The notes under the pieces are model-generated. The model saw only the letters and a list, made by a program, of their open reading frames with translations. It was not told the origin of the DNA and made no database searches. Position numbers and translations under genes: made by a program. Positions 3,509 to 64,000 of a DNA stretch of 64,000 nt are shown one piece after another. The stretch lies in IMG/VR virus record IMGVR_UViG_3300033997_000092, positions 186,001 through 250,000 of that record; one strand, 5' to 3'. Numbering within the stretch: position 1 is the stretch's first letter; each line of letters begins with the position of its first letter.

Positions 3509-4301
3509 TATTCTGGACCCGTACTCATTATCTGGTTCGTTGAGTAAAGAACAGAAAACTACCTTGTTTGCTCCTAAAGTAGTTACTGTAACCACATTGG
3601 AGAATGCTGCTGAAGAAGGCATCACTAAATATCGTGATGATAATAAGGACGGTTATGTTGACCTTCCTACAAACCACAAACTCAGTGAATTTTTCAATTA
3701 CGGTGAGTTGATTCACAGCGACAATGCTGTGAAATTCAAACTTGAGAATCGTGTACCTATCTCCCGCACAGATATTCTGGATTCAGCAATCTATACAGGT
3801 ACCAATTTGCTTGATAAGTTGCGTGTCCAGTTCGGCTCATTTGTTCCTAACAGTTGGTATCGCGGTCCTGAAGTTGAATACGCCGCAACATATCGTGATG
3901 GGTTTGTTAAGTACATCAACAAATCATACAGTCGTACACAGACAGGTGAGCCTACAGCGGCTGAGTTAGTGTCTACTGTCACGAACACGATGTTTTTGCG
4001 TGATTTGGTTTCCAGAGCAAATGCAGGTTCCCGTACCTGCGGCCTTATTCTTAACCTGTGGAACAACTACTACAAAGGCAAGCAGCACCCTAACGGTGAA
4101 GCTGTTGACTTTGAAATACCAGGTTCAAAAGGCAACAAAGCTTTGTGGGACTGGATCAAATCAAGCGGTCTCAAATACGACCAGCTCATTCTGGAGTTTC
4201 ATAATCCACAAACCGGTCCATTCTCTGGTTGGGTACACGGCAGTGTTATTGATGAACAGGTCAAAGGTCGTAAGAACCGCATGTCCGCATTTACAATTTA
4301 A
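3492..4301 (+). CDS. Peptidase M15A-family Zn peptidoglycan hydrolase (endolysin or virion lysin)
   Basis: LSEFFNYGELIHS, SWYR, QHPNGEAVDFEIPG, DQLILEF and SGWVH supply the His/Asp/His Zn ligands and the catalytic Arg of M15A. Confidence 0.9.
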   Translation: MDMKINILDPYSLSGSLSKEQKTTLFAPKVVTVTTLENAAEEGITKYRDDNKDGYVDLPTNHKLSEFFNYGELIHSDNAVKFKLENRVPISRTDILDSAIYTGTNLLDKLRVQFGSFVPNSWYRGPEVEYAATYRDGFVKYINKSYSRTQTGEPTAAELVSTVTNTMFLRDLVSRANAGSRTCGLILNLWNNYYKGKQHPNGEAVDFEIPGSKGNKALWDWIKSSGLKYDQLILEFHNPQTGPFSGWVHGSVIDEQVKGRKNRMSAFTI

Positions 4302-5848: not shown

Positions 5849-5875
5849 AAAAGGCAGCTCATTTGGCTGCCTTTT
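5849..5875 (+). terminator. Intrinsic terminator, likely bidirectional
   Basis: AAAAGGCAGC-tcatttg-GCTGCCTTTT, 10-bp stem just after the stop at 5842. Confidence 0.85.
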
Positions 5876-6025
5876 GCTTATCTACGGATTGTGCCTCAAT
5901 ATGCAGTGTCAAAAACCACCTACCCATTATGGCCGTCTGCGGTACCCAAATCCTGCCTATAACTACCAAAACTAAGTACCAAAATATGCTAGTTTTCGAC
6001 TAATATACTTAGCTTCCTTAGACCT

Positions 6026-6054: not shown

Positions 6055-6519
6055 TTATATCGCTACTGCCAGAGCAAGTGCTGCCAGTATTTTTAAACTA
6101 ATGCTTTCAATCTGATTCCGCAACTGTTCTTCCCTTCGTGCATCTATTTCCATATCCAATAACACGTAAGCTTTGTTGGCCCTCATTTCTTCCAGTATAG
6201 CCAATTCACGAATCAAGTTTGCTCTTTGTACAGTAAGTGCCAATATGCTGTTAGCTTGTTCAACCAACGCTGCGTTGGACTCTGCACTTATATAAGCCTG
6301 CTCGATTTTATAAAGCTCTGCAGGATCAACAAGCGCCCAAACTTTACCGTTCGTATCAACATATTCCTTTACGTCTGAATCAAATGCTTCCGGTAATGCT
6401 ACAGGAGTAATGTCCTTATGGACAAATTCCTCTATTTTCGTAGTCTGCATCACAACAGGTTCTTTTTGTTGTGACGCACAACCTACTAATAAAAACAACG
6501 CTAACAGCAACACACGCAT
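6055..6519 (-). CDS. Outer-membrane lipoprotein, spanin candidate (o-spanin or u-spanin-like)
   Basis: Start at MRVLLLALFLLVG-C (lipobox; SD GGAG), coiled-coil body, hydrophobic C-terminus ILAALALAVAI. The track's N-terminal extension lies inside the upstream gene. Confidence 0.7.
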   Translation of the reverse strand: MRVLLLALFLLVGCASQQKEPVVMQTTKIEEFVHKDITPVALPEAFDSDVKEYVDTNGKVWALVDPAELYKIEQAYISAESNAALVEQANSILALTVQRANLIRELAILEEMRANKAYVLLDMEIDARREEQLRNQIESISLKILAALALAVAI

Positions 6520-35964: not shown

Positions 35965-38334
35965 TTACGGCAAAGGAACTACAATGCCTGTCAACTCTGC
36001 TACAAGTGCTATTGTGAACTGGCCAGCAACAACATTCGTTACTTTAGCTTTAGCTACAATATCAACTACGCCATCTGGGTAGTTTTCTTTAAGCAGAATA
36101 AGACTTGACCCTTTAGAACCGTTACCATATCCGTAAGAGTTTTCACCGCCACGCTGAGTAGCAATACCTGTCTCGCCTGTACCTGGAATACTACGACCGT
36201 AGTCAACTGTCGCTTCACTAGGACGCTTAACAGCCAGAATGAATTGCAATTCTTCATTGCCTGATGTCACAGTGTAACCTGGACCTAAACGGGCACTAAA
36301 GTCTGCATGGACGTTAATCATTATGTCTGTTTTGAATTCCACACGCTGCGTAATGACAACTTCGTTTGTGTCTTCGGCGCGTTGGCGTGAACTGATGCGT
36401 TGGTAGTTACCTTTATCAAGTCTGACCTTATCAGTCGAACTGATTTTGAAGTTAGGGAACGTACCTTCTATTAGCATGCCTGGACCTGGAACCAAGTCAA
36501 TCGGCACAGCAGGCAGGAATATTGGGTCAGCATTCTGACGTATTACCTTGTACCCTGTTGGTGTAGGAATAATATCAGTTACCATTCCACGCAATCCAGT
36601 GTCGCTGCTTCCTTCTGCTCTTACGTTATGGAAAATCATTACTTCAAGTGGTCGTCCCGTAGCAAAATCTGTTCTTGCTACAAGCTTGTTGCCTACAATA
36701 GAATACTCTGACTTCATAACGTGTGCACCTGACTCACTCAAAAACACTAGGTCTTTTGACTGTGGTGCGATTGGCAGTGAAAGCACGTTACGCTTGGTAG
36801 TCGGATTGAACGTAGCCGTGATTACCTGTGTACTATAGCCTGGAATTGGACGCTGTATGAAAGCGTTGATTTCAATCTTCAAGCCTACACCAGGAGCTTC
36901 GCTGAATATTACTTTCCTGCGTACAACATCTACGGTATATGACGAATGCACTGTCATTATCCTGTCGATGAAGCACCAAGAATAGAATACGTTTTCAATA
37001 TCAGCAGGCAAGTCGAATTCACGACGGGAACCATCACCAATATCTTCAAAGCTAACGCATTCCGTGTACATGCCCGAGTGAGGCTCTAACTGGAATAAAC
37101 GCGCATCGATTTCTAACCCAGAAGGAACATTCTCTGCAAATTCCAGCATGTTGTCTTCGATGTTAGCGGACTGGCGGAACTGACGCACACCAGAAATACT
37201 GATATACCAGTAATGGCTATTCTTGCGATAGCTGTACAGGCGCATCTGAGTTTCATCTACACCTGCTGTCAGTGGATCTTCGCTGTACAGAAGGAATTTG
37301 TTTGTTTCTTCCATAACAACTTGCGTTATCGCACTGAACTTCAACTTACCTGGAGGATGATACAGGTTTCCTCTTGTGCGGGAAGCTGCTGCTCCACTCG
37401 GTACCCAACGTGGAACACCATCAAGCGGACCAGCTACAAGTACCCAGTCTTCATCTGTTCCTGCACGGCTAGGCAATCCTGAACCTGAGCCTTGCACTGT
37501 GTTTTGTTTCCAGATACTTACAGTGCTTGTTACATCAAGTTCCAAGAACGCCAAATCACGGGTCATTACTTCTTCGGCTGCTGTTATAACACAACGTCGT
37601 GTAGTACCTTCTCCAGGACCTGAAACAATTTGAACTACAACAATGTCATCTTCTACAAGACCATAATCAGTTATCAATGAATCGACTTTGAATATCGACG
37701 GGTCTGTTACTTCTGTTGGGTTACCCATAAACAACTTGGTAAATCCCAGGAAGCTCCAATGCTTACCTGCCAATCCACCGCGCACAGCAAGTCCTGCTGT
37801 TTCACTGTTTTGTTCATCTGGATTGACGACAATATCAAGCACAGCCACAGCATTGGTGATTGCTTCTGCTGGATTAGGTAAGGCATCGACGTTGCCTACA
37901 CTCGGTACTGAACCGAATTCTGACAGTGTGACATCGATAACGTGTGCATTGCCTTGTGCTAAGTGCAACAAGAATTCTATTTGCGCCGCACGATTCTTCC
38001 GTTTAGTAACAGATTCACTGAAACGTACACGGCCTAACACAGTGCCGTCGTTCAGTCCAATAGTTGCTTCCGACAGTTCTATTGATGAATTGCCTCCTAC
38101 TTCACGAGGTACAACTACAGTGAACCGAACTGTATTGCGGTTTAAAACTTCAATGTAGTGAATGCGTCCGCTGTGGTGTTCTGTACCTAGTAACGCATCT
38201 GGTGTCTGAGCCGGTTCTGAGCCTTGGTAATCACCAACAGCAAAGAAACGGGGGCGAATAACTGCGCCCCCTGCTTCGGCACTCAGCAACGCCTGTTCAC
38301 CTTGTGGGGTAAGAATCAAACGATCTGGTGTCAT
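35965..38334 (-). CDS. Baseplate-attached tail-collar fibre protein (DUF3751 / P2 gpH-like N-terminus)
   Basis: ILTPQGEQAL....FAVGD ... VGG ... EATIGLNDGTVLG N-terminal domain; internal GDGSRREFDLP-type repeats. Confidence 0.65.
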   Translation of the reverse strand: MTPDRLILTPQGEQALLSAEAGGAVIRPRFFAVGDYQGSEPAQTPDALLGTEHHSGRIHYIEVLNRNTVRFTVVVPREVGGNSSIELSEATIGLNDGTVLGRVRFSESVTKRKNRAAQIEFLLHLAQGNAHVIDVTLSEFGSVPSVGNVDALPNPAEAITNAVAVLDIVVNPDEQNSETAGLAVRGGLAGKHWSFLGFTKLFMGNPTEVTDPSIFKVDSLITDYGLVEDDIVVVQIVSGPGEGTTRRCVITAAEEVMTRDLAFLELDVTSTVSIWKQNTVQGSGSGLPSRAGTDEDWVLVAGPLDGVPRWVPSGAAASRTRGNLYHPPGKLKFSAITQVVMEETNKFLLYSEDPLTAGVDETQMRLYSYRKNSHYWYISISGVRQFRQSANIEDNMLEFAENVPSGLEIDARLFQLEPHSGMYTECVSFEDIGDGSRREFDLPADIENVFYSWCFIDRIMTVHSSYTVDVVRRKVIFSEAPGVGLKIEINAFIQRPIPGYSTQVITATFNPTTKRNVLSLPIAPQSKDLVFLSESGAHVMKSEYSIVGNKLVARTDFATGRPLEVMIFHNVRAEGSSDTGLRGMVTDIIPTPTGYKVIRQNADPIFLPAVPIDLVPGPGMLIEGTFPNFKISSTDKVRLDKGNYQRISSRQRAEDTNEVVITQRVEFKTDIMINVHADFSARLGPGYTVTSGNEELQFILAVKRPSEATVDYGRSIPGTGETGIATQRGGENSYGYGNGSKGSSLILLKENYPDGVVDIVAKAKVTNVVAGQFTIALVAELTGIVVPLP

Positions 38335-44467: not shown

Positions 44468-44926
44468 TTATCCTAATTTCTGTAATCCGAATGAAACTTT
44501 CTTGCCTGTTACTTCCAAACGTGGAATATCTACTTTGAGTTCACACACGTAGGTGCTAGTGCCGTAGTCCATTCCAATATCAATAGTGTCGATGTACACA
44601 CCAAGGTCACCACTTGCTGTACGGTCGGCTGCCGTTTGTATAACAGTTAAGATTTCGTCCCGTGTTATTGTGTCGAATGGCTCAAACAACAAGTCCATTA
44701 ACCTACGCACTCCCCACTCAGGTCTCCACCAGCGGCTGCCTCTTGGAGTAGATAGTAGCAACAAGAATTGTTGTACTTCTGCTTCGCCGTCATAAACAAA
44801 CTCGTCACCTTTCTTGCCAATATCAATATTGACATCACGGAATACATACGTTCCTTTATTCGTAGTTTCTTCCATTGACTCACGGGCAGCGACCTGTTGT
44901 TCATGCGTTTTAATAGTTCTGAACAT
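44468..44926 (-). CDS. Baseplate gp25/gpW-like protein
   Basis: LLLSTPRGSRWWRPEWGV...LFEP is the GPW_gp25 signature. Confidence 0.85.
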   Translation of the reverse strand: MFRTIKTHEQQVAARESMEETTNKGTYVFRDVNIDIGKKGDEFVYDGEAEVQQFLLLLSTPRGSRWWRPEWGVRRLMDLLFEPFDTITRDEILTVIQTAADRTASGDLGVYIDTIDIGMDYGTSTYVCELKVDIPRLEVTGKKVSFGLQKLG

Positions 44927-45216
44927 TACCCTGCTCCTACGTTGCTTGAACCACCCATCGAAGTATCTCCACAGGTAGTTTTATCTCCCATACGTGTGAC
45001 GCCACGTTTATTAACAAAAACTTTGGAAGAACCTGTTGCTGTAGGAACGTGACAGCTTCCATTACAGCAGTGTAGCTTGTATTTATCTCCAGTACGCACA
45101 GCAGGAAGACCGTTAACAAACACATTGTTACTGCCTTGAATTGCTGGTACAGGAGGAAAGCAAGGACTGTGTCCCATCGTCATGTCAGGTCCTTTACGGA
45201 TGACTGGTTTACCCAT
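44926..45216 (-). CDS. PAAR-type spike tip protein (T4 gp5.4-like)
   Basis: GH.C.P....GS.NVFVNG.PAVR.GD...H...C H...GSS.VFVN...R.GD..CG. Confidence 0.92.
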   Translation of the reverse strand: MGKPVIRKGPDMTMGHSPCFPPVPAIQGSNNVFVNGLPAVRTGDKYKLHCCNGSCHVPTATGSSKVFVNKRGVTRMGDKTTCGDTSMGGSSNVGAG

Positions 45217-45276
45217 GATCTTAGCCTCGGTTTTCTGTAAATATAAACTAAATTAGCAACTAGGAGGTATTTACAG

Positions 45277-45354
45277 ATGGCTAAGGTGCTGGCTAAGATA
45301 ATCAAGGTAACTAAAATCCCCTGCTTCCCAATGTCCTGGAGTCGAATATGGTAG
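45277..45354 (+). CDS. 25-aa upstream ORF overlapping the RNase HI start (not in ORF track)
   Basis: Perfect SD AGGAGGT 8 nt before ATG. Translates MAKVLAKIIKVTKIPCFPMSWSRIW; TAG overlaps ATG 45348. Confidence 0.45.
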   Translation: MAKVLAKIIKVTKIPCFPMSWSRIW

Positions 45355-48312: not shown

Positions 48313-48347
48313 CTGTAAATAATACTTGTTAACAACGGAGATTTATT

Positions 48348-55603: not shown

Positions 55604-56320
55604 ATGCTCAGTGAACTGTTAAAATACCTACAGCAAAACACATCGTTGGCCATGCTGCCTGCGTGGTCTGAAGATCTTATGTATATGTCTAGTGAAGATT
55701 CTGATCACTTGCAGCGTACAGCAACCAGTGCTATGATGGAAACGTATAAGCTTTTGACTAATGCACTTCCACGTGTGTTCAGCAAAAGTATTGCATTATC
55801 TCAGGCACCAAACGAAAACACCCGTGTCACGTTTGACGTACTGAACGGTTGTGTTGAAGACTACACGGACATGATAAAGACTACATTTATCGCTCGTGGT
55901 CAACCGATAGTTGATTACATGGTTGCATCTATCCGCAATCAGGTTACAGATTTTGAAATGACTGTCAACTGTTTTATTTTAACTTATACAACTGTTGGTC
56001 CATTACTTAATCTAATCCGTACAGGACAATCTATTGAACTTGCCTTGTCTGTTTTAGAGTGTTTACCTTCGCACGATAATGAAAATGGACCAATATACTG
56101 TCCTGTACTGCCTCCAGGGCCAATAGAACTCTATGACTTAGTTGCTACAAGGCGTGGTTTTACTGTAGGCCAACGGGTTACAGAAATTGTTTCAAGGTAC
56201 GATTGCTTGGTAGCGCAATCAGGCAACAAAGAAATGTCACTTTACTGGGAAGCTTTGAAAAACTTACCAGGCAACAAAAAAGTTCTGGGGTCATTAGGCT
56301 ATGAAAACAACTGCAGGTGA
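55604..56320 (+). CDS. Hypothetical protein
   Basis: 238-aa ORF. Confidence 0.72.
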   Translation: MLSELLKYLQQNTSLAMLPAWSEDLMYMSSEDSDHLQRTATSAMMETYKLLTNALPRVFSKSIALSQAPNENTRVTFDVLNGCVEDYTDMIKTTFIARGQPIVDYMVASIRNQVTDFEMTVNCFILTYTTVGPLLNLIRTGQSIELALSVLECLPSHDNENGPIYCPVLPPGPIELYDLVATRRGFTVGQRVTEIVSRYDCLVAQSGNKEMSLYWEALKNLPGNKKVLGSLGYENNCR

Positions 56321-56999: not shown

Positions 57000-58051
57000 G
57001 TCATTCTGGTCGTATCGAAAATGCGTTGACTAAGCTTAATGCGCTTGGTTGGACGTGTGAAGTCCACAACTTCAAAATTCCACAGTTCAGTATGCACGTT
57101 GACTATGATAACAAGCGTCTGGCAATCAACTGTCCGAAAGCATATCATACAGCGCAGATGCTGGACCACGTACACGATATTACTACTGTTGAAACTGAAT
57201 CTTTAAGTGGTCAGAAGTGTGTTGTTCGTGGCGCTTATGTTTATAGCTTTGTTGGTCTGGAAGTCTTTGAATACACTTCTCCAAACTCAGGCGACCATAA
57301 AGCATTTGCTAATCTGGTTCTTACTGGAATGCCACGCAGCATGTACACAGGTGAGTTTTTTCCTGAATCAGAAGACCGTGCTGTAATGCACATTGAAGTC
57401 GAAGGCGATGTCAATATCCAGACTCTGGACGCTGTCGTAGCTGCCGTACAGAACGCAACAGGTTATGTTCGTGAGAAGCCAACTATTCCAGGTCGCTACA
57501 ATGTTCGCCACATTGCTAAAGAAGGTCAACCTGAGTTTATCGGTGAAGAAGTTAACGTCTGGTTAGTTGAAGGCGTCCCTTACGTTGACTTAGACCCAGA
57601 CGGTAGCTGTCCAGTGTCCAGCGTACACGACGGTTTAGAATGGCAATTGATTGAAAAAGCAGACAGCCCTGTTGCTGAAGACGTTCAGGTATCTGTTTGT
57701 GTTCGCCGTTCAGACAGCACAATCGTTACAGCCGACGATGCTCCTGGTAATGGTGGTGCACACCACGAATACAGTATCTCGACAGTACACGATCCTGAAC
57801 TCAACTCCTCGTTTAAGATTGCAGTTTTGCGATTCCAGAATGGCGGAGTAGCAGAAGTCGGTGTTAACGGTATTCAGATTGAAGACCTGTTAGCTATGAG
57901 CGCACATCGTCTGGAGTGTTTCCAAGCAGGTCCGTTTGCCTGTATTCAAAATCAATCAGCGCTGGAAAGCATTAAACATGCACTTGCTACATTAGACGCA
58001 CGTACTGCTGACCGCAAGGCTCGTAATGTAGAAGGCAAACAAGTAGTCTAA
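56996..58051 (+). CDS. Tad1/Acb2-family immune-signal sponge domain fused to a ~235-aa unknown N-terminal region
   Basis: C-terminal GNGGAHHEY ... RFQNG...GVNG..IEDLL...RLECFQAGPF ... RTADRKARNVEG matches the Tad1/Acb2 consensus. Confidence 0.82.
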   Translation: MSHSGRIENALTKLNALGWTCEVHNFKIPQFSMHVDYDNKRLAINCPKAYHTAQMLDHVHDITTVETESLSGQKCVVRGAYVYSFVGLEVFEYTSPNSGDHKAFANLVLTGMPRSMYTGEFFPESEDRAVMHIEVEGDVNIQTLDAVVAAVQNATGYVREKPTIPGRYNVRHIAKEGQPEFIGEEVNVWLVEGVPYVDLDPDGSCPVSSVHDGLEWQLIEKADSPVAEDVQVSVCVRRSDSTIVTADDAPGNGGAHHEYSISTVHDPELNSSFKIAVLRFQNGGVAEVGVNGIQIEDLLAMSAHRLECFQAGPFACIQNQSALESIKHALATLDARTADRKARNVEGKQVV

Positions 58052-58055
58052 CCGT

Positions 58056-58082
58056 AAGAGGGAGCAATTTGCTCCCTCTTTT
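58056..58082 (+). terminator. Intrinsic terminator
   Basis: AAGAGGGAGC-aattt-GCTCCCTCTT then TT, after the stop at 58051. Confidence 0.85.
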
Positions 58083-58103
58083 CGTTTCTATGGTTCAGAG
58101 TCA

Positions 58104-58188
58104 TTATCTCTGTTATCCGTAGCAAAAACAGGACACTATAAAACCGACTGTTTTGAGCTATAGTTATCTCTGTTATCCGTTGCATAAA
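58104..58188 (+). repeat. Two 25-bp direct repeats (23/25 identical), 60-bp period
   Basis: TTATCTCTGTTATCCGT(A/T)GCA(A/T)AAA at 58104-58128 and 58164-58188. Confidence 0.85.
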
Positions 58189-58195
58189 TAGGCTA

Positions 58196-58225
58196 TTGAC
58201 ACCCACCCATATACTCTGCTATAAT
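58196..58225 (+). promoter_or_regulatory. Consensus sigma70 (early) promoter with extended -10
   Basis: TTGACA (58196-58201), 18-nt spacer, TG-c-TATAAT (58220-58225). Confidence 0.9.
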
Positions 58226-58257
58226 AAGCCCATACGTTGAACAGGAGAAAGCATATT

Positions 58258-58551
58258 ATGCTGCCTATACAGATAGCTACTGCAATCGTGATAAACAACA
58301 ACGTACACCGCGCAATATCAGGCGTTAACAGAACACGTTTGGGTATTGGAGCTGGTGGCTTTGTTGAACACCGAATCGTTCTTACTCCGCTCGGTCAGAA
58401 GTGCATGGACTTAGTGAAGCAGGACAGAGAGGCAATGCGTTCGGTTATTTACCAACAGCGTGTTGCTGAATTGAAAGCGCGTGGTATTACAAGACCGGGC
58501 GATATTATGAAATATACATACGATATGTTTGGAGGAAAAGTAAGATGGTAA
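58258..58551 (+). CDS. Hypothetical early protein
   Basis: ATG with SD AGGAG just downstream of the promoter. Confidence 0.75.
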   Translation: MLPIQIATAIVINNNVHRAISGVNRTRLGIGAGGFVEHRIVLTPLGQKCMDLVKQDREAMRSVIYQQRVAELKARGITRPGDIMKYTYDMFGGKVRW

Positions 58552-58991
58552 ACTCAAAAGATCTGAAAGCTGGTTCATTAATCGAAGCACAGTTCAACGA
58601 CGGTCCGAATCGTTCAGGTATCGTAACTGAACTCATACACCAGAAAGGAGCAAAAACTGAAGGTGAACTGTTCGGACTACGCGCCTTGTTTTATATGGAG
58701 GAGTTTAAAGCACACTGGAATATTTCTATTGAAACTTCTCAGGTAGTGTTTGTTGCTCCTACGCAGCCGGATTTACCTGCGTTACTTGACGAAGCCAAAC
58801 AAGCTGTAATGCGCTGGACATGCACTATCGACGGCGAAGAATCTGTGCCACTGAGCTTTGCTTCTATGACAATGCCAGAAGACGGCTTCAACCTAAGCAA
58901 AGAAGAAGCGGACAAACTAAAGTCGATGCAAGTCGGCGATAGTTTCGTTGCTGGTGATGAAGGTCAAGCACTGATTAAACGTGTAGCCTGA
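58545..58991 (+). CDS. Early protein, SH3/KOW-like N-terminus plus shared C-terminal module
   Basis: DLKAGSLIEAQF N-terminus; ends LSKEEADKLKSMQVGDSF...IKRVA. Confidence 0.65.
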   Translation: MVNSKDLKAGSLIEAQFNDGPNRSGIVTELIHQKGAKTEGELFGLRALFYMEEFKAHWNISIETSQVVFVAPTQPDLPALLDEAKQAVMRWTCTIDGEESVPLSFASMTMPEDGFNLSKEEADKLKSMQVGDSFVAGDEGQALIKRVA

Positions 58992-59003
58992 GTTTGATAT
59001 TAG

Positions 59004-59025
59004 TAGGCATTCCACAGAGTGCCTG
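59004..59025 (+). promoter_or_regulatory. Conserved intergenic RNA hairpin, copy 1
   Basis: TAGGCATT-ccacag-AGTGCCTG. Confidence 0.6.
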
Positions 59026-59057
59026 CACTATATGATTCTCAACACAAGGAAAACATT

Positions 59058-59492
59058 ATGTTCGATAACCAAAGCAAAGAAGTAAAATCAATCGCTACAC
59101 GTTTGGCAAAAATCACCAAGCCTCAAATGGCACTTGAACGTATGGCTCAGATTCTAAAAAGCAAAGGCATTAATGGTTATCCGCGTATAGGCCATTATGT
59201 ACCAGACATCGGATTTATGATTCCATCCACTGTTCCTGGTTCTGAGTACATAACTGTACCTCTTGTGCCGAAAGTACACGAACACATCAAAGGCCTTATG
59301 GAGAATCACAAAGGCTTCATTGTGTTGCGCCACAGACCCTTTTCTCTATTAGCTGGGGTTGCTTACCGTTCATCTGATGCGGTCATTGATGAACATGGTG
59401 TAGTACATACAGATAAACTTACATTCAACTGTGAGCGAGTAATGACACTCAGCTTAAACTTAGGCCCACGTTCTTCAAACGGAGATTTATAA
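59058..59492 (+). CDS. Hypothetical early protein
   Basis: ATG with SD AAGGAA; the track used upstream GTG 59019. Confidence 0.7.
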   Translation: MFDNQSKEVKSIATRLAKITKPQMALERMAQILKSKGINGYPRIGHYVPDIGFMIPSTVPGSEYITVPLVPKVHEHIKGLMENHKGFIVLRHRPFSLLAGVAYRSSDAVIDEHGVVHTDKLTFNCERVMTLSLNLGPRSSNGDL

Positions 59493-60061
59493 TGTCAGAT
59501 GCACCAGCAAAATTTTTACCTGTTAAAGGTCGCGTATACACAACTAGCCAGATCGACAATGCGTTGGATCTACGAGACAGTCCTCATTTAGGTTTCTACA
59601 ACATCGACAAGGTAAAGGATGTTGTTCAGGATAGTCATTTGGCTGTCAATCTCAGCACTCTGCCTGGCTGGAAGGACCTGCGCTGGATATTTATTCGTGA
59701 AACACACGAATGGATTCCAATCTTCCAGATCGTGGAAGAAGATGAACCGAAGCTGTTAAAGCTGCTTCGGGAAAGCGATACTGAAGGTGAAGACGAAGAA
59801 GCCGTGTACTACCCACACATACCAGAGGGATTTGATGAAAAGGGCAGACCAGTTAAACCTGTGCATGTTCCTAAGACGTACACGTTGTACGATAAAGAAC
59901 GGCATGTAGACACCGAAGAATCTCGTGGTCCGTTCAACTTACTGTCTCTGATTCACACCACTGATTGGTCTGACGAGGAGTTTGACAAAATCACCGATTT
60001 GACTGTTGGTCAAGTCGTTGAATTTGCCGAAGGTCGTCTGGTAGTAACTCGCGTGAGTTAA
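59492..60061 (+). CDS. Early protein with shared C-terminal module
   Basis: Ends WSDEEFDKITDLTVGQVV...VVTRVS. Confidence 0.7.
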   Translation: MSDAPAKFLPVKGRVYTTSQIDNALDLRDSPHLGFYNIDKVKDVVQDSHLAVNLSTLPGWKDLRWIFIRETHEWIPIFQIVEEDEPKLLKLLRESDTEGEDEEAVYYPHIPEGFDEKGRPVKPVHVPKTYTLYDKERHVDTEESRGPFNLLSLIHTTDWSDEEFDKITDLTVGQVVEFAEGRLVVTRVS

Positions 60062-60062
60062 G

Positions 60063-60097
60063 ATTACTAATGGGCATTGTGTTCAGTGTCCATTGTT
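60063..60097 (+). promoter_or_regulatory. Conserved intergenic RNA hairpin, copy 2
   Basis: ATTACTAATGGGCATT-gtgttc-AGTGTCCATTGTT. Confidence 0.65.
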
Positions 60098-60122
60098 AAT
60101 ACTCAAACAAAGGTAACAGGAT

Positions 60123-61271
60123 ATGCTACAACATTTTATAGTCTGCTTGATAGCAGGCTTCTTTATGTCGTTCTCGCGTTGGTTCAAACACAAAGATGCA
60201 CCAGTTGACCCAAATGTACCAAAACACAGGCGGCCCCGACTAGAGGTAGTCAACTTTGAGAAGATAACACTCAAGGAATTTGGTATAAGCGCAATAGGCA
60301 ATGTGTTTGTTGCTGCATTCAGTATGATATTCTTCTTCATCTACTTGACTACAGCCGCATCCGACTTTGAGATTTTGAATGGCCGTGTAACAGACAAACA
60401 GCGTGATGAAGTCAGTTGTAGCCATTCATACTCCTGCCCGCCTTGCCGTGACGTATGTACAAAACGCAGTGACGGAAGTAGGAGTTGTACACGGGAATGT
60501 TCAACGTGTTATAAACATCGTTATGATGTGGACTGGGATGTGTTTACTACAGTAGGTACATTCACTATATCGCGTGGTCCTAACAATGAACAGGGATTAG
60601 ATATGCCTCCGTACTGGGCGTCTTTACAAATAGGTGACCCAGCCTCGGCAGAACATACTTATGAAAACTTTTTGCTTATCGGCCAGAACAGCCTGAACTT
60701 CAAAGCCGAAAGTGTTGAAGAACGATTTGCAGGTTCGTTACACAAATACCCTGAAGTGTACAACTACTTTGATTATAACCGTGTACTCAACACAACCAAA
60801 GCAGGAACAAGCTGGCTCAATGATAAACTCAATCGTTGGTTATCTGTCAAAGGCAGTCAGAAGCAGCTCAACATCATATACGTGTTGACTGAACAGAACC
60901 CTGAATACTTCTATGCCTTAATGTCGAAGTGGTCTGGCGGTAAAAAGAACGACTTGATTATAGTGATTGGTATGGACAACACAGGAAAAGAGATTCTTTG
61001 GTTCAATGCAAACACGTACGGTAAAGGCATGAACAACCGCGAACTACTGACCGAACTGAAGTTTGCTTCTGTTGGTAAGCCGTTTGACGTAAGCTTGGTA
61101 GACAAGCATTTGGAATTAGTAGATGAAAAGTTTGTGCGTTTACCTGCAGAAACTTTCGCTCAGAAGAAATCTGAAGTTCAGATACCGCTGTGGTTCTCGC
61201 TTATCATGGCATCCTTAAATATGTTAGTTAGCTATTTCATTTCACGTAAAATGAGGGAAGTAAATTTATGA
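60123..61271 (+). CDS. Inner-membrane protein with large periplasmic region (Cys-rich finger, TPM-like domain)
   Basis: Two N-terminal hydrophobic segments, CSHSYSCPPCRDVC...C..ECSTC, QLNIIYV...WSGGKKND.IIVIG, C-terminal TM. Confidence 0.6.
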   Translation: MLQHFIVCLIAGFFMSFSRWFKHKDAPVDPNVPKHRRPRLEVVNFEKITLKEFGISAIGNVFVAAFSMIFFFIYLTTAASDFEILNGRVTDKQRDEVSCSHSYSCPPCRDVCTKRSDGSRSCTRECSTCYKHRYDVDWDVFTTVGTFTISRGPNNEQGLDMPPYWASLQIGDPASAEHTYENFLLIGQNSLNFKAESVEERFAGSLHKYPEVYNYFDYNRVLNTTKAGTSWLNDKLNRWLSVKGSQKQLNIIYVLTEQNPEYFYALMSKWSGGKKNDLIIVIGMDNTGKEILWFNANTYGKGMNNRELLTELKFASVGKPFDVSLVDKHLELVDEKFVRLPAETFAQKKSEVQIPLWFSLIMASLNMLVSYFISRKMREVNL

Positions 61272-61849
61272 AAACGCAAAAAGGTTCGGCTCTGGGTATT
61301 ATTCTGGGTGTGTTGGGTTTATTGTTTTTGGTTGTTGCTCTGATTGCAGCAATTTTCTTTCACTACAAAGACAGAGGCTCCGACTTCCAGGTCAAAATCG
61401 GTTCATCTTACCGTCTGGCTCAATCTTCATTGAGTAAGTACACACTCAAGATGCAGGATTTGAAGGGCCTGAAGAATATGGACACGCAGGCACTGAAGGA
61501 TCTGTTAACTTCATCCAACACTTCACGTTACGGTGCAGACGGTTCTCAGGCTGCGGTACAGTGGTTGAAAGAAAACAACATTCCTGTCAACAACGAACTG
61601 GTAACAAAAATGGCTGTGTTGATTGACTCAGGCCGTGACGAATACGGTGTACAGCAGGAAAACTTAAATGCCGACTGTACCACATTCAAATATGAACTGG
61701 GTCGTAGCTGGAGCGGTCTGTGGTATTCAATCGCTGGTCGTCCTGATGAAAGCAACAAAAAAGAATTCAGCCTGTCTATGTGTGACCTGGTTCTGGATGC
61801 TGCTACAGTAGAAGCATACGAAACCAAACAAGCGAAGTCCGTGTTCTAA
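61268..61849 (+). CDS. Membrane-anchored helical protein (LemA-like), partner of the preceding gene
   Basis: N-terminal TM, helical body, SGLWYSIAG; ATGA-coupled. Confidence 0.5.
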   Translation: MKTQKGSALGIILGVLGLLFLVVALIAAIFFHYKDRGSDFQVKIGSSYRLAQSSLSKYTLKMQDLKGLKNMDTQALKDLLTSSNTSRYGADGSQAAVQWLKENNIPVNNELVTKMAVLIDSGRDEYGVQQENLNADCTTFKYELGRSWSGLWYSIAGRPDESNKKEFSLSMCDLVLDAATVEAYETKQAKSVF

Positions 61850-61850
61850 C

Positions 61851-61885
61851 ATTACTAATAGGCATTCATAGTAGTGCCTATTGTT
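61851..61885 (+). promoter_or_regulatory. Conserved intergenic RNA hairpin, copy 3
   Basis: ATTACTAATAGGCATT-catagt-AGTGCCTATTGTT. Confidence 0.65.
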
Positions 61886-62285
61886 GATGAACGAAAAAGG
61901 AAAACTAATCATGTTAGTAGATGCAAAGAAACTCAAAGCAGTAAAATTCTTGTCGATGCTGGACCAACTATACATTGACATTCTTGGTGCAGAGCCGAAT
62001 ACTATGGAACCAAACTCTCTGGTAGTGTTCACGCAGTTTGCCGACTTAATAGATGACAATACGGAACAAAACATCCGTAACTTGTTTGAAGGCACGATTG
62101 ACCTTGCGTGGACAATACAAGAAAACAGAACATCGGTTCCGTTTTATTCGCAGGGCATTGCTGTATTCATTATCTATTTACTTAAACGTCACTGCAACCG
62201 TTTGAAAGCAGACTGGCCATTAGAGTGGCGTTTGCTTTCAGCCGTCGCTACAAACATCGGCGTATCATTGCGCGAAGGCGACTAA
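61881..62285 (+). CDS. Hypothetical protein (start uncertain, ATG ~61911 has SD AAGGAA)
   Basis: ORF fills the gap between hairpin copy 3 and the next gene. Confidence 0.65.
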   Translation: MLMNEKGKLIMLVDAKKLKAVKFLSMLDQLYIDILGAEPNTMEPNSLVVFTQFADLIDDNTEQNIRNLFEGTIDLAWTIQENRTSVPFYSQGIAVFIIYLLKRHCNRLKADWPLEWRLLSAVATNIGVSLREGD

Positions 62286-62313
62286 ATCAAATCTAAATTT
62301 TATCGAGGTATTT

Positions 62314-62946
62314 ATGAAAGTTTTAAGAATTGCTGTTGAAGGCAAACGTGTAGAAAAACCGCGCTGGACAAAAGAGACACCTGAAGAAAGACTGGCGAGT
62401 GAGCGTTTACCTACGTTCACCGTGTTCGGTACTTCTGACAGAACAGACCCACGTATGCACATGGATATTATGGCAACGGCATCCATAATCCGTGGTGCTG
62501 CTGGTGCCCTGGGCGTGTCTCCTGAAGTGTTTACGTCTGAGTTTAACTTTGAACGAAGTGACCACGAAGACAATATGCACACAATACACTTCTTACCAAA
62601 AGTAAAGCCTGGTGTACTGGCGCATCTGCAATTTCCTGGCGATGACGAACCCCATCTAGTAATGGTTATTGCTGAAGTTCTGGAACGTCAAGGTGTAGTT
62701 TGGGAAAAACACGAACCTAATCGAGAAATCCGTCTTCTCAACAAGATTGATTTGCCTGATACAAACGCCCGTATACAATTTCCACAAGTTGACGGTTGGG
62801 TAGTAGCCAGTGTTATCAAAGAAGTAAAAAACACCAACGCCAGATCCATCCACAGTGCGAAATGGGAACCAGGTTTGGTGATTGGCAGTGATTGGTTCTT
62901 TGTAACGCATGAATCTCTGACACCTATTGATTTTGCTCAATGGTGA
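62314..62946 (+). CDS. Hypothetical protein
   Basis: 210 aa, SD GAGGT. Confidence 0.75.
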   Translation: MKVLRIAVEGKRVEKPRWTKETPEERLASERLPTFTVFGTSDRTDPRMHMDIMATASIIRGAAGALGVSPEVFTSEFNFERSDHEDNMHTIHFLPKVKPGVLAHLQFPGDDEPHLVMVIAEVLERQGVVWEKHEPNREIRLLNKIDLPDTNARIQFPQVDGWVVASVIKEVKNTNARSIHSAKWEPGLVIGSDWFFVTHESLTPIDFAQW

Positions 62947-62949
62947 TTT

Positions 62950-63126
62950 ATGTCAAACAGTGAAAAATCATTTGTAGTATCTACGCCGTTTAGCGAAGTG
63001 GTTATGTCACACCGTGATGTGCTGCGTAAATTCAAGTTCACGCCTGCTCAGAGTAAAACATTCTCTGGATTAGGCATCAATTCAACGATGTCAGTAGGCA
63101 AAACTAACATCAAGCGTAAGGAATAA
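62950..63126 (+). CDS. 58-aa stand-alone copy of the shared C-terminal module (not in ORF track)
   Basis: SD GGTG; MSNSEKSFVVSTPFSEVVMSHRDVLRKFKFTPAQSKTFSGLGINSTMSVGKTNIKRKE*; fills the gap exactly. Confidence 0.65.
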   Translation: MSNSEKSFVVSTPFSEVVMSHRDVLRKFKFTPAQSKTFSGLGINSTMSVGKTNIKRKE

Positions 63127-63130
63127 CAAA

Positions 63131-63766
63131 ATGAAACCAGCTAACAATGCTCCTATGTACGCTGCACTGTATCCTGAATTGGCTGAGATATGCCGTAGCT
63201 TTGGTTATGCGCTTGCTGTTCACGGCACTATGTCACGCGATTTTGATATTGTGGCAATACCGTGGGCAGAAACAATGTCAGGCGGACCTGAAGACGTAGT
63301 TAAAGCGATCTGCAAACGCTTTGCAGTAAACAAAGTCTCGGGCGACCCAGTGATTATGAATCACGGACGAATCTGCTACAATTTGGCACTAATGGGTGAG
63401 TTCTTTTTCGACCTCAGTTTCATAGCAACTGATTCTCCTGCTGTTAAGCTACGCGCAGGCCTGAACCAAGCTATCGAACTACTGGCTACTGCACTGCATG
63501 AGCCTGAGCAGATCACCGAAGAAGAAATCCATGAGCTGCGTACTCTGGAACGTGAATCGGTCGGTGACTCTACTCCGATATGTGTACGACGTTTCACGTT
63601 GACTGTTGACGAAGATGCCGAAGATGTCTCTTATGCTGCTATCAGAAAAAGAGCCGATGCTTTGGACCTGAATGATGAAGATCTGACAAACATTGCTCGC
63701 CTTGATGTTCAGGAAGAGCTTCCGATTCACGAAAATCCAATAGTTATAATCACCCGTATTGCATAA
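63131..63766 (+). CDS. Minimal nucleotidyltransferase-like domain plus shared C-terminal module
   Basis: YALAVHGTMSRDFDIVAIPW (hG[ST]..DxD) and a third acidic motif FFDLSF. Confidence 0.55.
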   Translation: MKPANNAPMYAALYPELAEICRSFGYALAVHGTMSRDFDIVAIPWAETMSGGPEDVVKAICKRFAVNKVSGDPVIMNHGRICYNLALMGEFFFDLSFIATDSPAVKLRAGLNQAIELLATALHEPEQITEEEIHELRTLERESVGDSTPICVRRFTLTVDEDAEDVSYAAIRKRADALDLNDEDLTNIARLDVQEELPIHENPIVIITRIA

Positions 63767-63777
63767 GGAAACAGGCA

Positions 63778-64000
63778 ATGAAAGAATTCCACATTTTAAC
63801 ACACGAAAAAGAAATTCTCCGTGTAGTAGAACGCAACTTAGTTGCTATTGAAGGTGTATTATGTATGCGGGCATATGCACCTAACGGTACTGTTATCAAT
63901 GTAGCCGAATCTCGCATTGTCTACGGACACGAAGACACGCAAGTTTTAGAAACGATGCGTACTGGTAAAGTCAAAGTAAAAGACGTTGCCAGTTGGTGGC
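63778..64000 (+). CDS. Hypothetical protein, truncated by window end
   Basis: SD AAGGAA; MKEFHILTHEKEILRVV... stays open to base 64000. Confidence 0.65.
   Translation, partial: MKEFHILTHEKEILRVVERNLVAIEGVLCMRAYAPNGTVINVAESRIVYGHEDTQVLETMRTGKVKVKDVASWW

What the first reader, a model, noticed from the sequence alone, without database searches (positions are those of the whole stretch)
59004..61885. Family of covarying intergenic RNA hairpins punctuating the early gene block
Seen: three elements, each 2-13 nt after a stop codon, with core GGCATT-N6-AGTG(C/T)C. Copies 2 and 3 are 26/29 identical outside a fully divergent 6-nt loop. All differences preserve pairing (A-U to G-C; G-C to G-U), and a U-G wobble is kept in all three, which argues for RNA structure rather than a DNA palindrome. 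There is no real U tract. Known: stem-loop regulatory cassettes (PeSL elements) mediate gene shuffling in some T4-type phages, and T7 early mRNA is cut at RNase III hairpins. Inference: processing/stabilising sites or cassette boundaries for accessory genes.
Basis: partly seen in the sequence, partly recalled or inferred. Interest (0 to 1): 0.6.

Follow-up and report, generated by a model that had tools for sequence, protein, structure and literature searches.

The report
T7-type RNase III sites between early genes
The three hairpins are real and most likely cut sites for the host enzyme RNase III, of the type known from phage T7 early messages; this jumbo phage has five of them, unrelated phages carry the same element, and genes are gained and lost next to them.

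Summary
The core GGCATT-N6-AGTG(C/T)C occurs three times in the window (0.08 expected). The 261-kb genome has two more copies, just past the window's end. All five lie on the sense strand, a few bases after a stop codon and 22-30 nt before the next start, inside operons headed by consensus sigma-70 promoters.

The stems are longer than described: a 9-12 bp upper stem, a small internal loop or mismatch, and a lower stem. The same element occurs in Lu11, Aeromonas phage Aeh1, a T5-sized phage, a T7-like phage and about ten other viral contigs, with strong covariation across 28 copies.

A covariance model built only from those non-T7 copies picks out four places in T7, and nothing else on the sense strand. 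They are R1.1, R18.5, R1.3 and R0.3. The invariant U-A then U·G pairs below the loop are the published "distal box" of E. coli RNase III, and the free loop sequence and the 11-bp register also fit.

Best explanation: host RNase III processing signals of the R1.1 class (0.8, untested experimentally). In related strains, gene content changes at these hairpins, so they also behave as cassette junctions. They are not PeSLs, because they carry no promoter.

The parts
58989..59041 (+). Hairpin c1. Upper stem 59003-59012 / 59017-59026 with a 4-nt loop, an asymmetric 2-nt/3-nt internal loop, and a lower stem. It lies between the 148-aa gene (stop 58991) and the 144-aa gene (ATG 59058).
   Evidence: (MFE -22.5 kcal/mol, z -3.58).
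60055..60104 (+). Hairpin c2. 12-bp upper stem 60068-60079 / 60084-60095 with a 4-nt loop, one C.U mismatch, and a lower stem. It lies between the 189-aa gene (stop 60061) and the 382-aa gene (ATG 60123).
   Evidence: (MFE -19.8, z -3.14).
61850..61889 (+). Hairpin c3. 11-bp upper stem, 6-nt loop, one C.U mismatch, and a lower stem. It lies between the 193-aa gene (stop 61849) and the 124-aa gene (ATG 61911). It is 26/29 identical to c2 outside the loop.
   Evidence: (z -3.78).
59029..59030 (+). Predicted RNase III cut on the 3' arm of c1, after model position 34. This is the register in which the model aligns T7 R1.1, R18.5, R1.3 and R0.3. It would leave a 28-nt leader before the ATG at 59058.
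   Evidence: Inference from the alignments and the 11-bp rule. The T7 cut coordinates are recalled from Dunn and Studier 1983. Not measured here.
60096..60097 (+). Predicted RNase III cut on the 3' arm of c2, leaving a 26-nt leader before the ATG at 60123. Because the stem is almost fully paired, a second cut on the 5' arm (about 60068/60069) is possible.
   Evidence: Inference as for c1.
61884..61885 (+). Predicted RNase III cut on the 3' arm of c3, leaving a 26-nt leader before the ATG at 61911.
   Evidence: Inference as for c1.
58196..58225 (+). Consensus sigma-70 promoter (TTGACA, 18 nt, TG-TATAAT; 12/12) that heads the operon holding c1, c2, c3 and c5.
   Evidence: sequence.
58104..58192 (+). 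Two tandem copies (58104-58132 and 58164-58192) of a 29-nt motif. Elsewhere in the genome this motif precedes consensus sigma-70 promoters. It marks the early promoters.
   Evidence: (D1).
58056..58080 (+). Ordinary intrinsic terminator (11-pair G+C-rich stem followed by a T run) that ends the preceding transcription unit. It contrasts with the U-tract-less hairpins.
   Evidence: (I13).
60123..61849 (+). Two-gene module (382 aa, phrog_2087; 193 aa, phrog_1383) flanked by the near-identical hairpins c2 and c3. In relative L071 it is absent, with a single hairpin left at the junction.
59058..59492 (+). The 144-aa gene directly after c1. In a strain that is otherwise 92-97% identical it is replaced by a 34%-identical allele. 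In relative L069 it is absent, and the hairpin abuts the next gene.
   Evidence: (joint 59062 to 59492 in three runs).

Best explanation
The hairpins are processing signals for the host's RNase III, of the same class as T7 R1.1, placed between cistrons of early polycistronic mRNAs made by host RNA polymerase. RNase III would bind the 11-bp helix below the loop. It would recognise the U-A / U.G 'distal box' next to the loop-closing pair and cut the 3' arm in or next to the internal loop, after window 59029, 60096 and 61884. The upstream message would then end in a protective 3' hairpin. The downstream message would start 22-30 nt before its start codon. c2 and c3 are almost fully paired, so both arms may be cut there. 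Shown: the family exists, it covaries, it lies on the sense strand between cistrons, it matches the T7 sites, and it fits the published determinants. Inferred: the cleavage itself, its position and its effect on message stability. A secondary role is also likely. Because the roughly 40-70-nt elements are repeated and better conserved than the genes around them, they serve as crossover points where early gene cassettes are inserted, lost or swapped.
For: (1) Family and context. There are five sense-strand copies in the genome. All lie after stop codons, inside two operons headed by 12/12 sigma-70 promoters.

(2) RNA structure. Over 28 copies, 82.8% of cells are paired against about 37% slid, 14 of 17 pairs have double changes, and 0 of 500 shuffles reach this. 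Pairs outside the search pattern covary too: column 9-32 is AU 12 / CG 8 / GC 6, and the loop-closing pair is CG 15 / AU 6 / GC 4.

(3) Model R2, built from non-T7 copies only, hits T7 at 5854-5892 (23.9 bits), 36823-36861 (22.1), 6414-6453 and 859-895. There are no other sense-strand hits in T7, and none at all in T4 or T5. These places lie just upstream of genes 1.1, 18.5, 1.3 and 0.3. The first has the GCAA tetraloop, U12:G27 and C13:G26 that the literature describes for R1.1.

(4) Fit to published determinants (PMC1540722). The distal box is U-A then a stringently required U.G; here these are 28/28 and 27/28. The tetraloop sequence is free; here the loops are fully variable. The middle box is C-G plus U.G, with G-C at the second pair raising reactivity; here these are C-G 27/28 and G-C 25/28. 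The helix from loop to cut is 11 bp. Natural R1.1 has a non-Watson-Crick pair at pb4; here the 11th pair is unpaired in 16 of 28 copies.

(5) Predicted folds of c1, c4 and c5 have the same shape as R1.1: a 9-10 bp upper stem, a 2-nt/3-nt asymmetric internal loop, and a lower stem.

(6) In a scan allowing all pair types at the wobble position, the context 'stop, hairpin, RBS, ATG without a T run' is almost confined to the U.G version. The perfectly paired versions are mostly A-run/T-run terminators or lie in coding sequence.

(7) The phage has no RNase III gene of its own.

(8) Orthologous hairpins in relatives keep or compensate the stem while the loop changes. The intergenic element is more conserved than the flanking genes: 87% against 71.5% and 58.7%.
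Against: There is no RNA-end data. The genome comes from a subsurface metagenome, no RNA run holds it, and only contigs could be laid on it. The host is unknown, so its RNase III specificity is assumed to resemble E. coli's. The proximal box fits only in part: pb1 is mostly A-U where G-C is optimal, and pb3 is often C-G or G-C. The weaker T7 hits (R1.3, R0.3) score only 11-12 bits, and six other T7 sites are not found. The T7 cut coordinates (890, 5887, 6448, 36856) come from memory of Dunn and Studier 1983. Only the identity of R1.1 could be checked against a paper held here. Most external copies were found with a pattern or model that presupposes the inner stem, which inflates conservation there.
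Confidence: 0.8

Rival explanations
1. The hairpins are passive RNA elements that need no RNase III. They would act as stabilisers against 3' exonucleases, or as insulators that uncouple translation of neighbouring cistrons.
For: The hairpins are stable (-17 to -22.5 kcal/mol), sit directly after stop codons, and have no U tract.
Against: A passive hairpin needs no fixed sequence. Yet U-A, U.G, A-U and C-G below the loop are invariant in 27-28 of 28 copies from unrelated phages, while the rest of the stem covaries. These invariant pairs are exactly the RNase III distal and middle boxes. The model also retrieves the T7 RNase III sites.
Confidence: 0.07
2. The hairpins are binding sites for another sequence-specific protein. 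This could be a phage translational repressor or antiterminator acting on RNA, or a dimeric DNA-binding protein acting on the palindrome.
For: The stem sequence is conserved while the loop varies. At the DNA level the element is an inverted repeat (TAGGCA ... TGCCTA).
Against: All copies lie on the sense strand. The conserved U.G would be a C.A mismatch on the other strand, and reverse-strand scores are 15-20 bits lower. The carriers are unrelated phages, and the genes flanking the external copies share no homology. No Rfam family matches. Early transcripts are made before phage proteins exist.
Confidence: 0.05
3. The hairpins are only recombination scars or mobile cassette ends, like PeSLs, and have no role in the RNA.
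For: Gene content changes at the hairpins between relatives, and near-identical pairs flank modules.
Against: Compensatory changes at orthologous sites, and loops that drift while stems are kept, show selection on RNA pairing. The defining PeSL promoter is absent. This reading does not explain the match to RNase III determinants.
Confidence: 0.05
4. The hairpins are transcription terminators or attenuators.
For: They are stem-loops placed after stop codons.
Against: No T run follows, and the terminator scan does not list them. The genome's real terminators are G+C-rich stems with T runs, for example 58056-58080 and many sites. The hairpins lie in the middle of operons with no promoter after them.
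Confidence: 0.02

Closest known systems
T7 RNase III processing signals (R1.1, also R0.3, R1.3, R18.5) in mRNAs of Escherichia phage T7
   Same: They lie between cistrons in a host-transcribed early polycistronic RNA. They have an upper stem of about 10 bp with a loop of free sequence, U-A/U.G directly below the loop-closing pair, then A-U and C-G, a non-canonical 11th pair or asymmetric internal loop, and a lower stem. The leader to the next start codon is 22-35 nt. Ungapped identity to the R1.1 39-mer is 19-24 of 39.
   Different: The carrier is a 261-kb jumbo phage related to PaBG, Lu11 and NCTB, with no T7-type RNA polymerase context. The sixth pair is G-C instead of U.G. pb1 is mostly A-U. 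c2 and c3 have only a 1x1 mismatch instead of an internal loop. Cleavage has not been shown.
PeSL elements (promoter-early stem-loops) of T4-type phages (Arbiol 2010; Comeau 2014, PMC4122927)
   Same: They are short, repeated intergenic elements between small early or accessory genes. Near-identical copies flank gene modules, and indels and replacements between close relatives lie at the elements.
   Different: A PeSL is a stem-loop plus a sigma-70-type promoter, and its stem-loops have other consensus sequences. Here no promoter follows, the stem matches an RNase III signal, and the phage is not T4-type.
Intrinsic (rho-independent) terminators
   Same: They are stem-loops just downstream of stop codons.
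   Different: These hairpins have no U tract, A+U-rich irregular long stems and a conserved U.G, and they lie within operons.

Membership tests
R1.1-class substrate of E. coli-type RNase III | Helix of at least 11 bp between the loop and the scissile bond | tested here: met
   The upper stems are 9-12 bp plus a loop-closing pair in all five copies. In 28 copies, pairs 1-10 from the loop are paired in 89-100% of sequences. The rule comes from PMC1540722.
R1.1-class substrate of E. coli-type RNase III | Distal box: U-A then U.G below the loop-closing pair, with a stringent need for U.G | tested here: met
   U-A is present in 28/28 copies and U.G in 27/28 (the exception is C-G in one Aeh1 copy). 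All five copies in this genome have both. In an unbiased Y/R scan, the intercistronic context goes with the U.G version.
R1.1-class substrate of E. coli-type RNase III | No requirement for a particular loop sequence | tested here: met
   Loops differ in every copy and drift between orthologous copies while the stems stay the same.
R1.1-class substrate of E. coli-type RNase III | Middle and proximal box preferences (mb C-G; pb1 G-C, pb2 A-U/U-A, pb3 A-U, pb4 A-U/U-A or non-canonical) | tested here: inconclusive
   These fit: mb is C-G in 27/28 and the second mb pair is G-C in 25/28 (a substitution reported to raise reactivity). pb2 is U-A in 24/28. pb4 is unpaired in 16/28, as with the U.C pair of natural R1.1. 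These do not fit the optimum: pb1 is A-U in 21/28, and pb3 is C-G or G-C in 14/28.
R1.1-class substrate of E. coli-type RNase III | Internal loop or bulge that limits cutting to one strand and leaves a 3' hairpin | tested here: met
   c1, c4 and c5 fold with the same 2-nt/3-nt asymmetric loop as T7 R1.1. c2 and c3 have only a single mismatch, so a double cut is possible there.
R1.1-class substrate of E. coli-type RNase III | Similarity to proven sites: a model of the family must recognise them | tested here: met
   R2, built without T7 sequences, has only four sense-strand hits in the 39,937-bp T7 genome. They lie upstream of genes 1.1, 18.5, 1.3 and 0.3. T4 and T5 give none.
R1.1-class substrate of E. 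coli-type RNase III | Cleavage by RNase III at the predicted bond | not testable with these tools
   No RNA run holds the phage, and only metagenome contigs could be laid on it.
PeSL (promoter-early stem-loop) of T4-type phages | A sigma-70-type early promoter (-35, 17 nt, -10) directly downstream of the stem-loop, within the element | tested here: not met
   The only strong promoter in 57500-64000 is at 58196-58225. After c2 there is only a weak 9/12 match (60113-60142), no better than in shuffles.
PeSL (promoter-early stem-loop) of T4-type phages | The carrier is a T4-type phage, with the elements in hyperplastic regions | tested here: not met
   The structural proteins relate the phage to NCTB, PaBG, Lu11 and the Erwinia/Dickeya jumbo phages. 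However, Aeh1, a T4-type phage, does carry the hairpin, once followed by a promoter-like TTGACA.
PeSL (promoter-early stem-loop) of T4-type phages | Elements lie at indel or replacement boundaries between close relatives, and tandem copies flank cassettes | tested here: met
   L071 has a single hairpin with the c2-type stem and the c3-type downstream leader, where this phage has c2, the 382-aa and 193-aa genes, then c3. L069 lacks the 144-aa gene after the c1-position hairpin. In L069 a 246-aa gene is flanked by two c4-type hairpins.
Intrinsic terminator | G+C-rich stem followed by a U tract | tested here: not met
   The terminator scan does not list them, and the sequences show no T run.

The most novel reading that the evidence does not exclude
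The R1.1-type RNase III hairpin is a portable 'punctuation cassette' shared across unrelated phage families: PaBG/Lu11-type jumbo phages, T4-type Aeh1, a T5-sized phage, T7-like phages and others. It spreads horizontally together with early accessory genes, and it is itself the crossover point at which those genes are shuffled. On this reading, one host enzyme's recognition element doubles as a pan-phage recombination linker. [quoted passage not shown]
Probability: 0.4. Interest if true: 0.7.

Novelty: new member of a known kind. Interest (0 to 1): 0.55.

Why it matters
RNase III processing of phage early mRNA is textbook for T7, but it is not annotated in jumbo, T4-type or T5-sized phages.

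This work gives a small, testable covariance model (39 positions) that finds such sites in many phage lineages. It predicts exact cut positions in this genome.

It also shows that nature conserves the U-A/U.G distal box, which so far is known mainly from in vitro mutagenesis of one substrate. Earlier alignments of natural E. coli substrates found no positive determinant (PMC1540722).

Finally, it links these sites to the shuffling of early accessory genes. This offers a promoter-free counterpart to the PeSL mechanism, and it helps define transcription units and cassette borders when annotating metagenomic phages.

Tried and rejected
- Near-identity search of phage records: no match for the region.
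- Pfam on ten flanking proteins: nothing. PHROGs gave only unnamed families.
- Rfam, permissive threshold: no family on the hairpins.
- One-gene-family UTR idea: rejected, because the genes flanking the external copies are not homologous to each other.
- A relaxed search for ATT-N6-AGT hairpins in this genome gave only the five copies plus chance-level hits in coding sequence (13 hits against 6.25 expected).
- Sigma-54 or operator-type DNA sites: considered and rejected by hand, on spacing and on strand asymmetry.
- Literature search by the motif letters, and for RNase III in jumbo phages: nothing relevant.
- The JGI metagenome scan returned only an identical copy of the same genome.
- RNA evidence: no holder on record as RNA. 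The four 'RNA?' wastewater runs are kept as contigs, so they cannot show ends.
- T7 RNase III coordinates could not be read from the records held, because the feature tables omit them, and one old paper is not held.
- A phage-encoded RNase III: none found.
Full report
**The observation**

The core GGCATT-N6-AGTG[CT]C matches the window exactly three times: 59006, 60073 and 61861, all on the + strand. Shuffles give 0.08 matches on average and never three.
- Each copy lies in a short gap between + strand ORFs. It starts a few bases after a stop codon and ends 26-34 nt before the next ATG.
Copies 2 and 3 are 26/29 identical outside a divergent loop. Their two stem differences keep pairing. A U.G pair is present in every copy. 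No T run follows.
- Folding shows that the structures are larger than the 6-bp core. There is a 9-12 bp upper stem, a mismatch or small internal loop, and a lower stem. Energies are 3.1-3.8 SD below shuffled sequence.

**The genome and its other signals**

The window is bases 186001-250000 of a complete 261,032-bp virus record with terminal repeats. Its virion proteins are distantly related to phage NCTB, PaBG, Lu11 and the Erwinia/Dickeya jumbo phages, at 30-36% identity. No close relative is in the phage collection.

A survey of all intergenic regions shows three kinds of signal:
- ordinary G+C-rich terminators with T runs;
- consensus sigma-70 promoters preceded by a conserved 29-nt motif;
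- a recurrent CTGTAAATA motif.

The hairpins belong to none of these. In the window, a terminator (58056-58080) is followed by two copies of the 29-nt motif and a 12/12 promoter at 58196-58225. The operon it heads runs about 10.6 kb, to a terminator near genome 254,850, and holds c1, c2 and c3.

**More copies in this genome**

An exact fourth core lies at genome 257269, in the next operon, which has the same promoter type.

A covariance model built from four copies found a fifth at genome 250455-250493 (25.4 bits). There the top of the stem (A-U, U.G, U-A around a 6-nt loop) is kept, and three pairs below it are exchanged by double changes. This copy precedes a sigma-70-family gene. A better model finds no further copy in the genome.

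**The family is widespread**

The exact pattern TAGGCATT-N6-AGTGCCTA was scanned over 2.9 million viral contigs and gave 45 hits. That is roughly the number expected by chance, by my own estimate of the collection's size (not a tool result). The context, however, is not random. About 16 independent contigs carry it on the sense strand, just after a stop codon and 21-45 nt before a ribosome-binding site and ATG. Among them are Aeromonas phage Aeh1 and Pseudomonas phage Lu11.
- The flanking genes are not homologous to each other, so this is not the leader of one gene family.
- The model then found extra copies with other stems in the same phages. Lu11 has four to five in its right-end early region. 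Aeh1 has two that flank one ORF. A 176-kb phage has nine or more within 28-54 kb. A T5-sized phage has one copy inside each terminal repeat.
- One carrier has a T7-type RNA polymerase; four others that were tested do not.

**Covariation**

In an alignment of 28 sense copies, a 17-pair structure is paired in 82.8% of cells, against 37-39% when the 3' partners are slid. Fourteen pairs show changes on both sides. None of 500 shuffles reaches the observed values.

Many copies were found with a pattern that fixes eight pairs. Pairs outside that pattern covary as well: the pair below it is AU 12, CG 8, GC 6 with one unpaired, and the loop-closing pair is CG 15, AU 6, GC 4.

Four pairs under the loop-closing pair are invariant or nearly so: U-A 28/28, U.G 27/28, A-U 28/28 and C-G 27/28. 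The eleventh pair from the loop is unpaired in 16 of 28 copies. Beyond it lies a lower stem.

**Identification**

Rfam has no match. The second model (R2) was built without any T7 sequence. Run over model phages, it found nothing in T4 or T5 and one hit in T7, at 5854-5892. With filters off over the whole T7 genome, the only sense-strand hits are 5854-5892 (23.9 bits), 36823-36861 (22.1), 6414-6453 (11.8) and 859-895 (11.1). These lie just upstream of genes 1.1, 18.5, 1.3 and 0.3.

T7's RNase III sites are named after the gene downstream. Model position 34 falls on 5887, 36856, 6448 and 890. I recall these as the R1.1, R18.5, R1.3 and R0.3 cut positions of Dunn and Studier (1983). This is from memory and could not be read from the records held.

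The identity of the first hit as R1.1 is checkable. It has the GCAA tetraloop, the U12:G27 and C13:G26 pairs, and the U-A/U.G pairs described for R1.1 and its minimal form.

**Fit to the known recognition rules**

Pertzev and Nicholson (PMC1540722) showed the following for E. coli RNase III:
- an 11-bp helix between the tetraloop and the cut is the minimum;
- the tetraloop sequence does not matter;
- the 2-bp distal box is U-A then U.G, and U.G to A-U costs more than 30-fold;
- a middle box follows, and G-C in place of U12:G27 raises reactivity;
- a 4-bp proximal box ends at the scissile bond, where natural R1.1 has a U.C pair;
- internal loops restrict cutting to one strand, leaving a protective 3' hairpin.

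The family matches in register on every one of these points except pb1 and pb3, which are often not the optimal pairs.

The predicted folds of c1, c4 and c5 have the same shape as R1.1, including the 2-nt/3-nt asymmetric internal loop. c2 and c3 are almost fully paired.

The perfectly paired versions are mostly A-run/T-run terminators or lie in coding sequence. The intercistronic context without a U tract belongs almost only to the U.G version.

The phage has no RNase III gene, so a host enzyme would act. This matches T7, whose roughly 7-kb early precursor is cut by host RNase III at five sites (PMC4858673).

**Relatives and cassette behaviour**

Metagenome contigs from biofilm, wastewater and drinking water hold related strains. 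The hairpins are retained in them, and three runs show a break at 59062 to 59492. Homologues of the 189-aa protein at 92, 70 and 56% identity led to longer contigs, in which R2 finds hairpins at corresponding places.
- **Orthologous hairpins.** They keep or compensate the stem while the loop changes. The c1 intergenic region is 87% identical where the flanking genes are 71.5% and 58.7%.
- **The 92% strain.** The 144-aa gene after c1 is replaced by a 34%-identical allele, while its neighbours are 92-96% identical.
- **The 70% relative (L069).** That gene is absent and the hairpin abuts the next gene. The 382-, 193- and 124-aa genes are missing between their anchors, with one c3-type hairpin at the junction. 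A 246-aa gene is flanked by two c4-type hairpins.
- **The 56% relative (L071).** A single hairpin has the stem and 3' flank of c2, followed by the leader and first nine codons of the gene that follows c3 here. The two-gene module 60123-61849 therefore differs by an indel whose ends are the two near-identical hairpins. The pair c5 plus sigma gene is also absent there.

This is the behaviour described for PeSLs. The elements lack the defining promoter, however. With hairpins at 4 of about 18 junctions, the overall association is suggestive rather than statistically shown. The c2/c3 hybrid is the one clear case.

**Verdict**

The hairpins are best explained as host RNase III processing signals of the T7 R1.1 class that punctuate early operons (confidence 0.8). 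Cleavage, its position and its effects are inferred, not shown. They probably also serve as crossover points for early-gene cassettes (about 0.5). This is a new member of a known kind. The wide distribution outside T7-like phages, and the natural conservation of the distal box, are the parts a specialist may find new.

Noticed in passing
window 58104-58132 and 58164-58192; also genome 1677, 150703, 158678 (twice) and 254826: A conserved 29-nt motif (TTATCTCTGTTATCCGTAGCAAAAACAGG and variants) sits directly upstream of consensus sigma-70 promoters (cTATTGAC, 17-18 nt, TATAAT) at about six places in the genome. It may be an UP-like element or a factor-binding element of the early promoters. In the window, the first copy has no good promoter behind it.
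   Followed up: partly
window 45235-45243 (+), 45268-45276 (-), 48313-48321 (+); many intergenic sites genome-wide: The motif CTGTAAATA recurs just after terminators and before genes. It faces both ways in the divergent gap at 44926-45348. It is a candidate phage-specific middle or late promoter, possibly read with the phage sigma factor. In the window there are 3 matches against 0.64 expected.
   Followed up: partly
L001:519-1178 (genome 250519-251178, just beyond the window's end): The gene that follows hairpin c5 encodes a sigma-70-family protein (Sigma70_r2 5.7e-17, r4 3.1e-07). The hairpin and the gene are both missing at this place in relative L071.
   Followed up: partly
window 60123-61849: The gene pair phrog_2087 (382 aa, Cys-rich, membrane-anchored) and phrog_1383 (193 aa) has homologues at 37-42% identity in 487 phage records. 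These belong to very different types: T5-like Vibrio phages, Vi1-like Salmonella phages, Aeromonas T4-type phages and Serratia jumbo phages. Its function is unknown.
   Followed up: partly
window 59058-59492: This is a hypervariable gene. In a strain whose neighbouring genes are 92-97% identical, its allele is only 34% identical.
   Followed up: yes
L033:3354-3403 and the neighbouring copies at 3932, 5548, 5831 and 6407 (a 176,660-bp viral contig): In this phage the hairpin is part of a repeated intergenic unit of about 80 nt, with a second small hairpin and the RBS. One copy carries a 17-nt loop insertion, and another has a compensatory G-C to C-G swap.
   Followed up: partly
G002:C1:6919-6957 and 126859-126897 (a 128,241-bp viral contig; L043/L053): A T5-sized phage carries the hairpin inside both terminal repeats, the position of the first-transferred pre-early genes in T5. 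T5 itself has no copy.
   Followed up: no
window 56019-56036 / 56091-56108: An 18-nt inverted repeat, 89% complementary, with 54 nt between the arms, lies inside the 238-aa ORF at 55604-56320 (I1).
   Followed up: no
L060:5578-5660 (Aeh1, record 71400-71483): One Aeh1 copy has C-G in place of the U.G pair. It is followed by TTGACA and, 17 nt later, a -10-like hexamer. This gives a PeSL-like arrangement of hairpin plus promoter in a T4-type phage.
   Followed up: no
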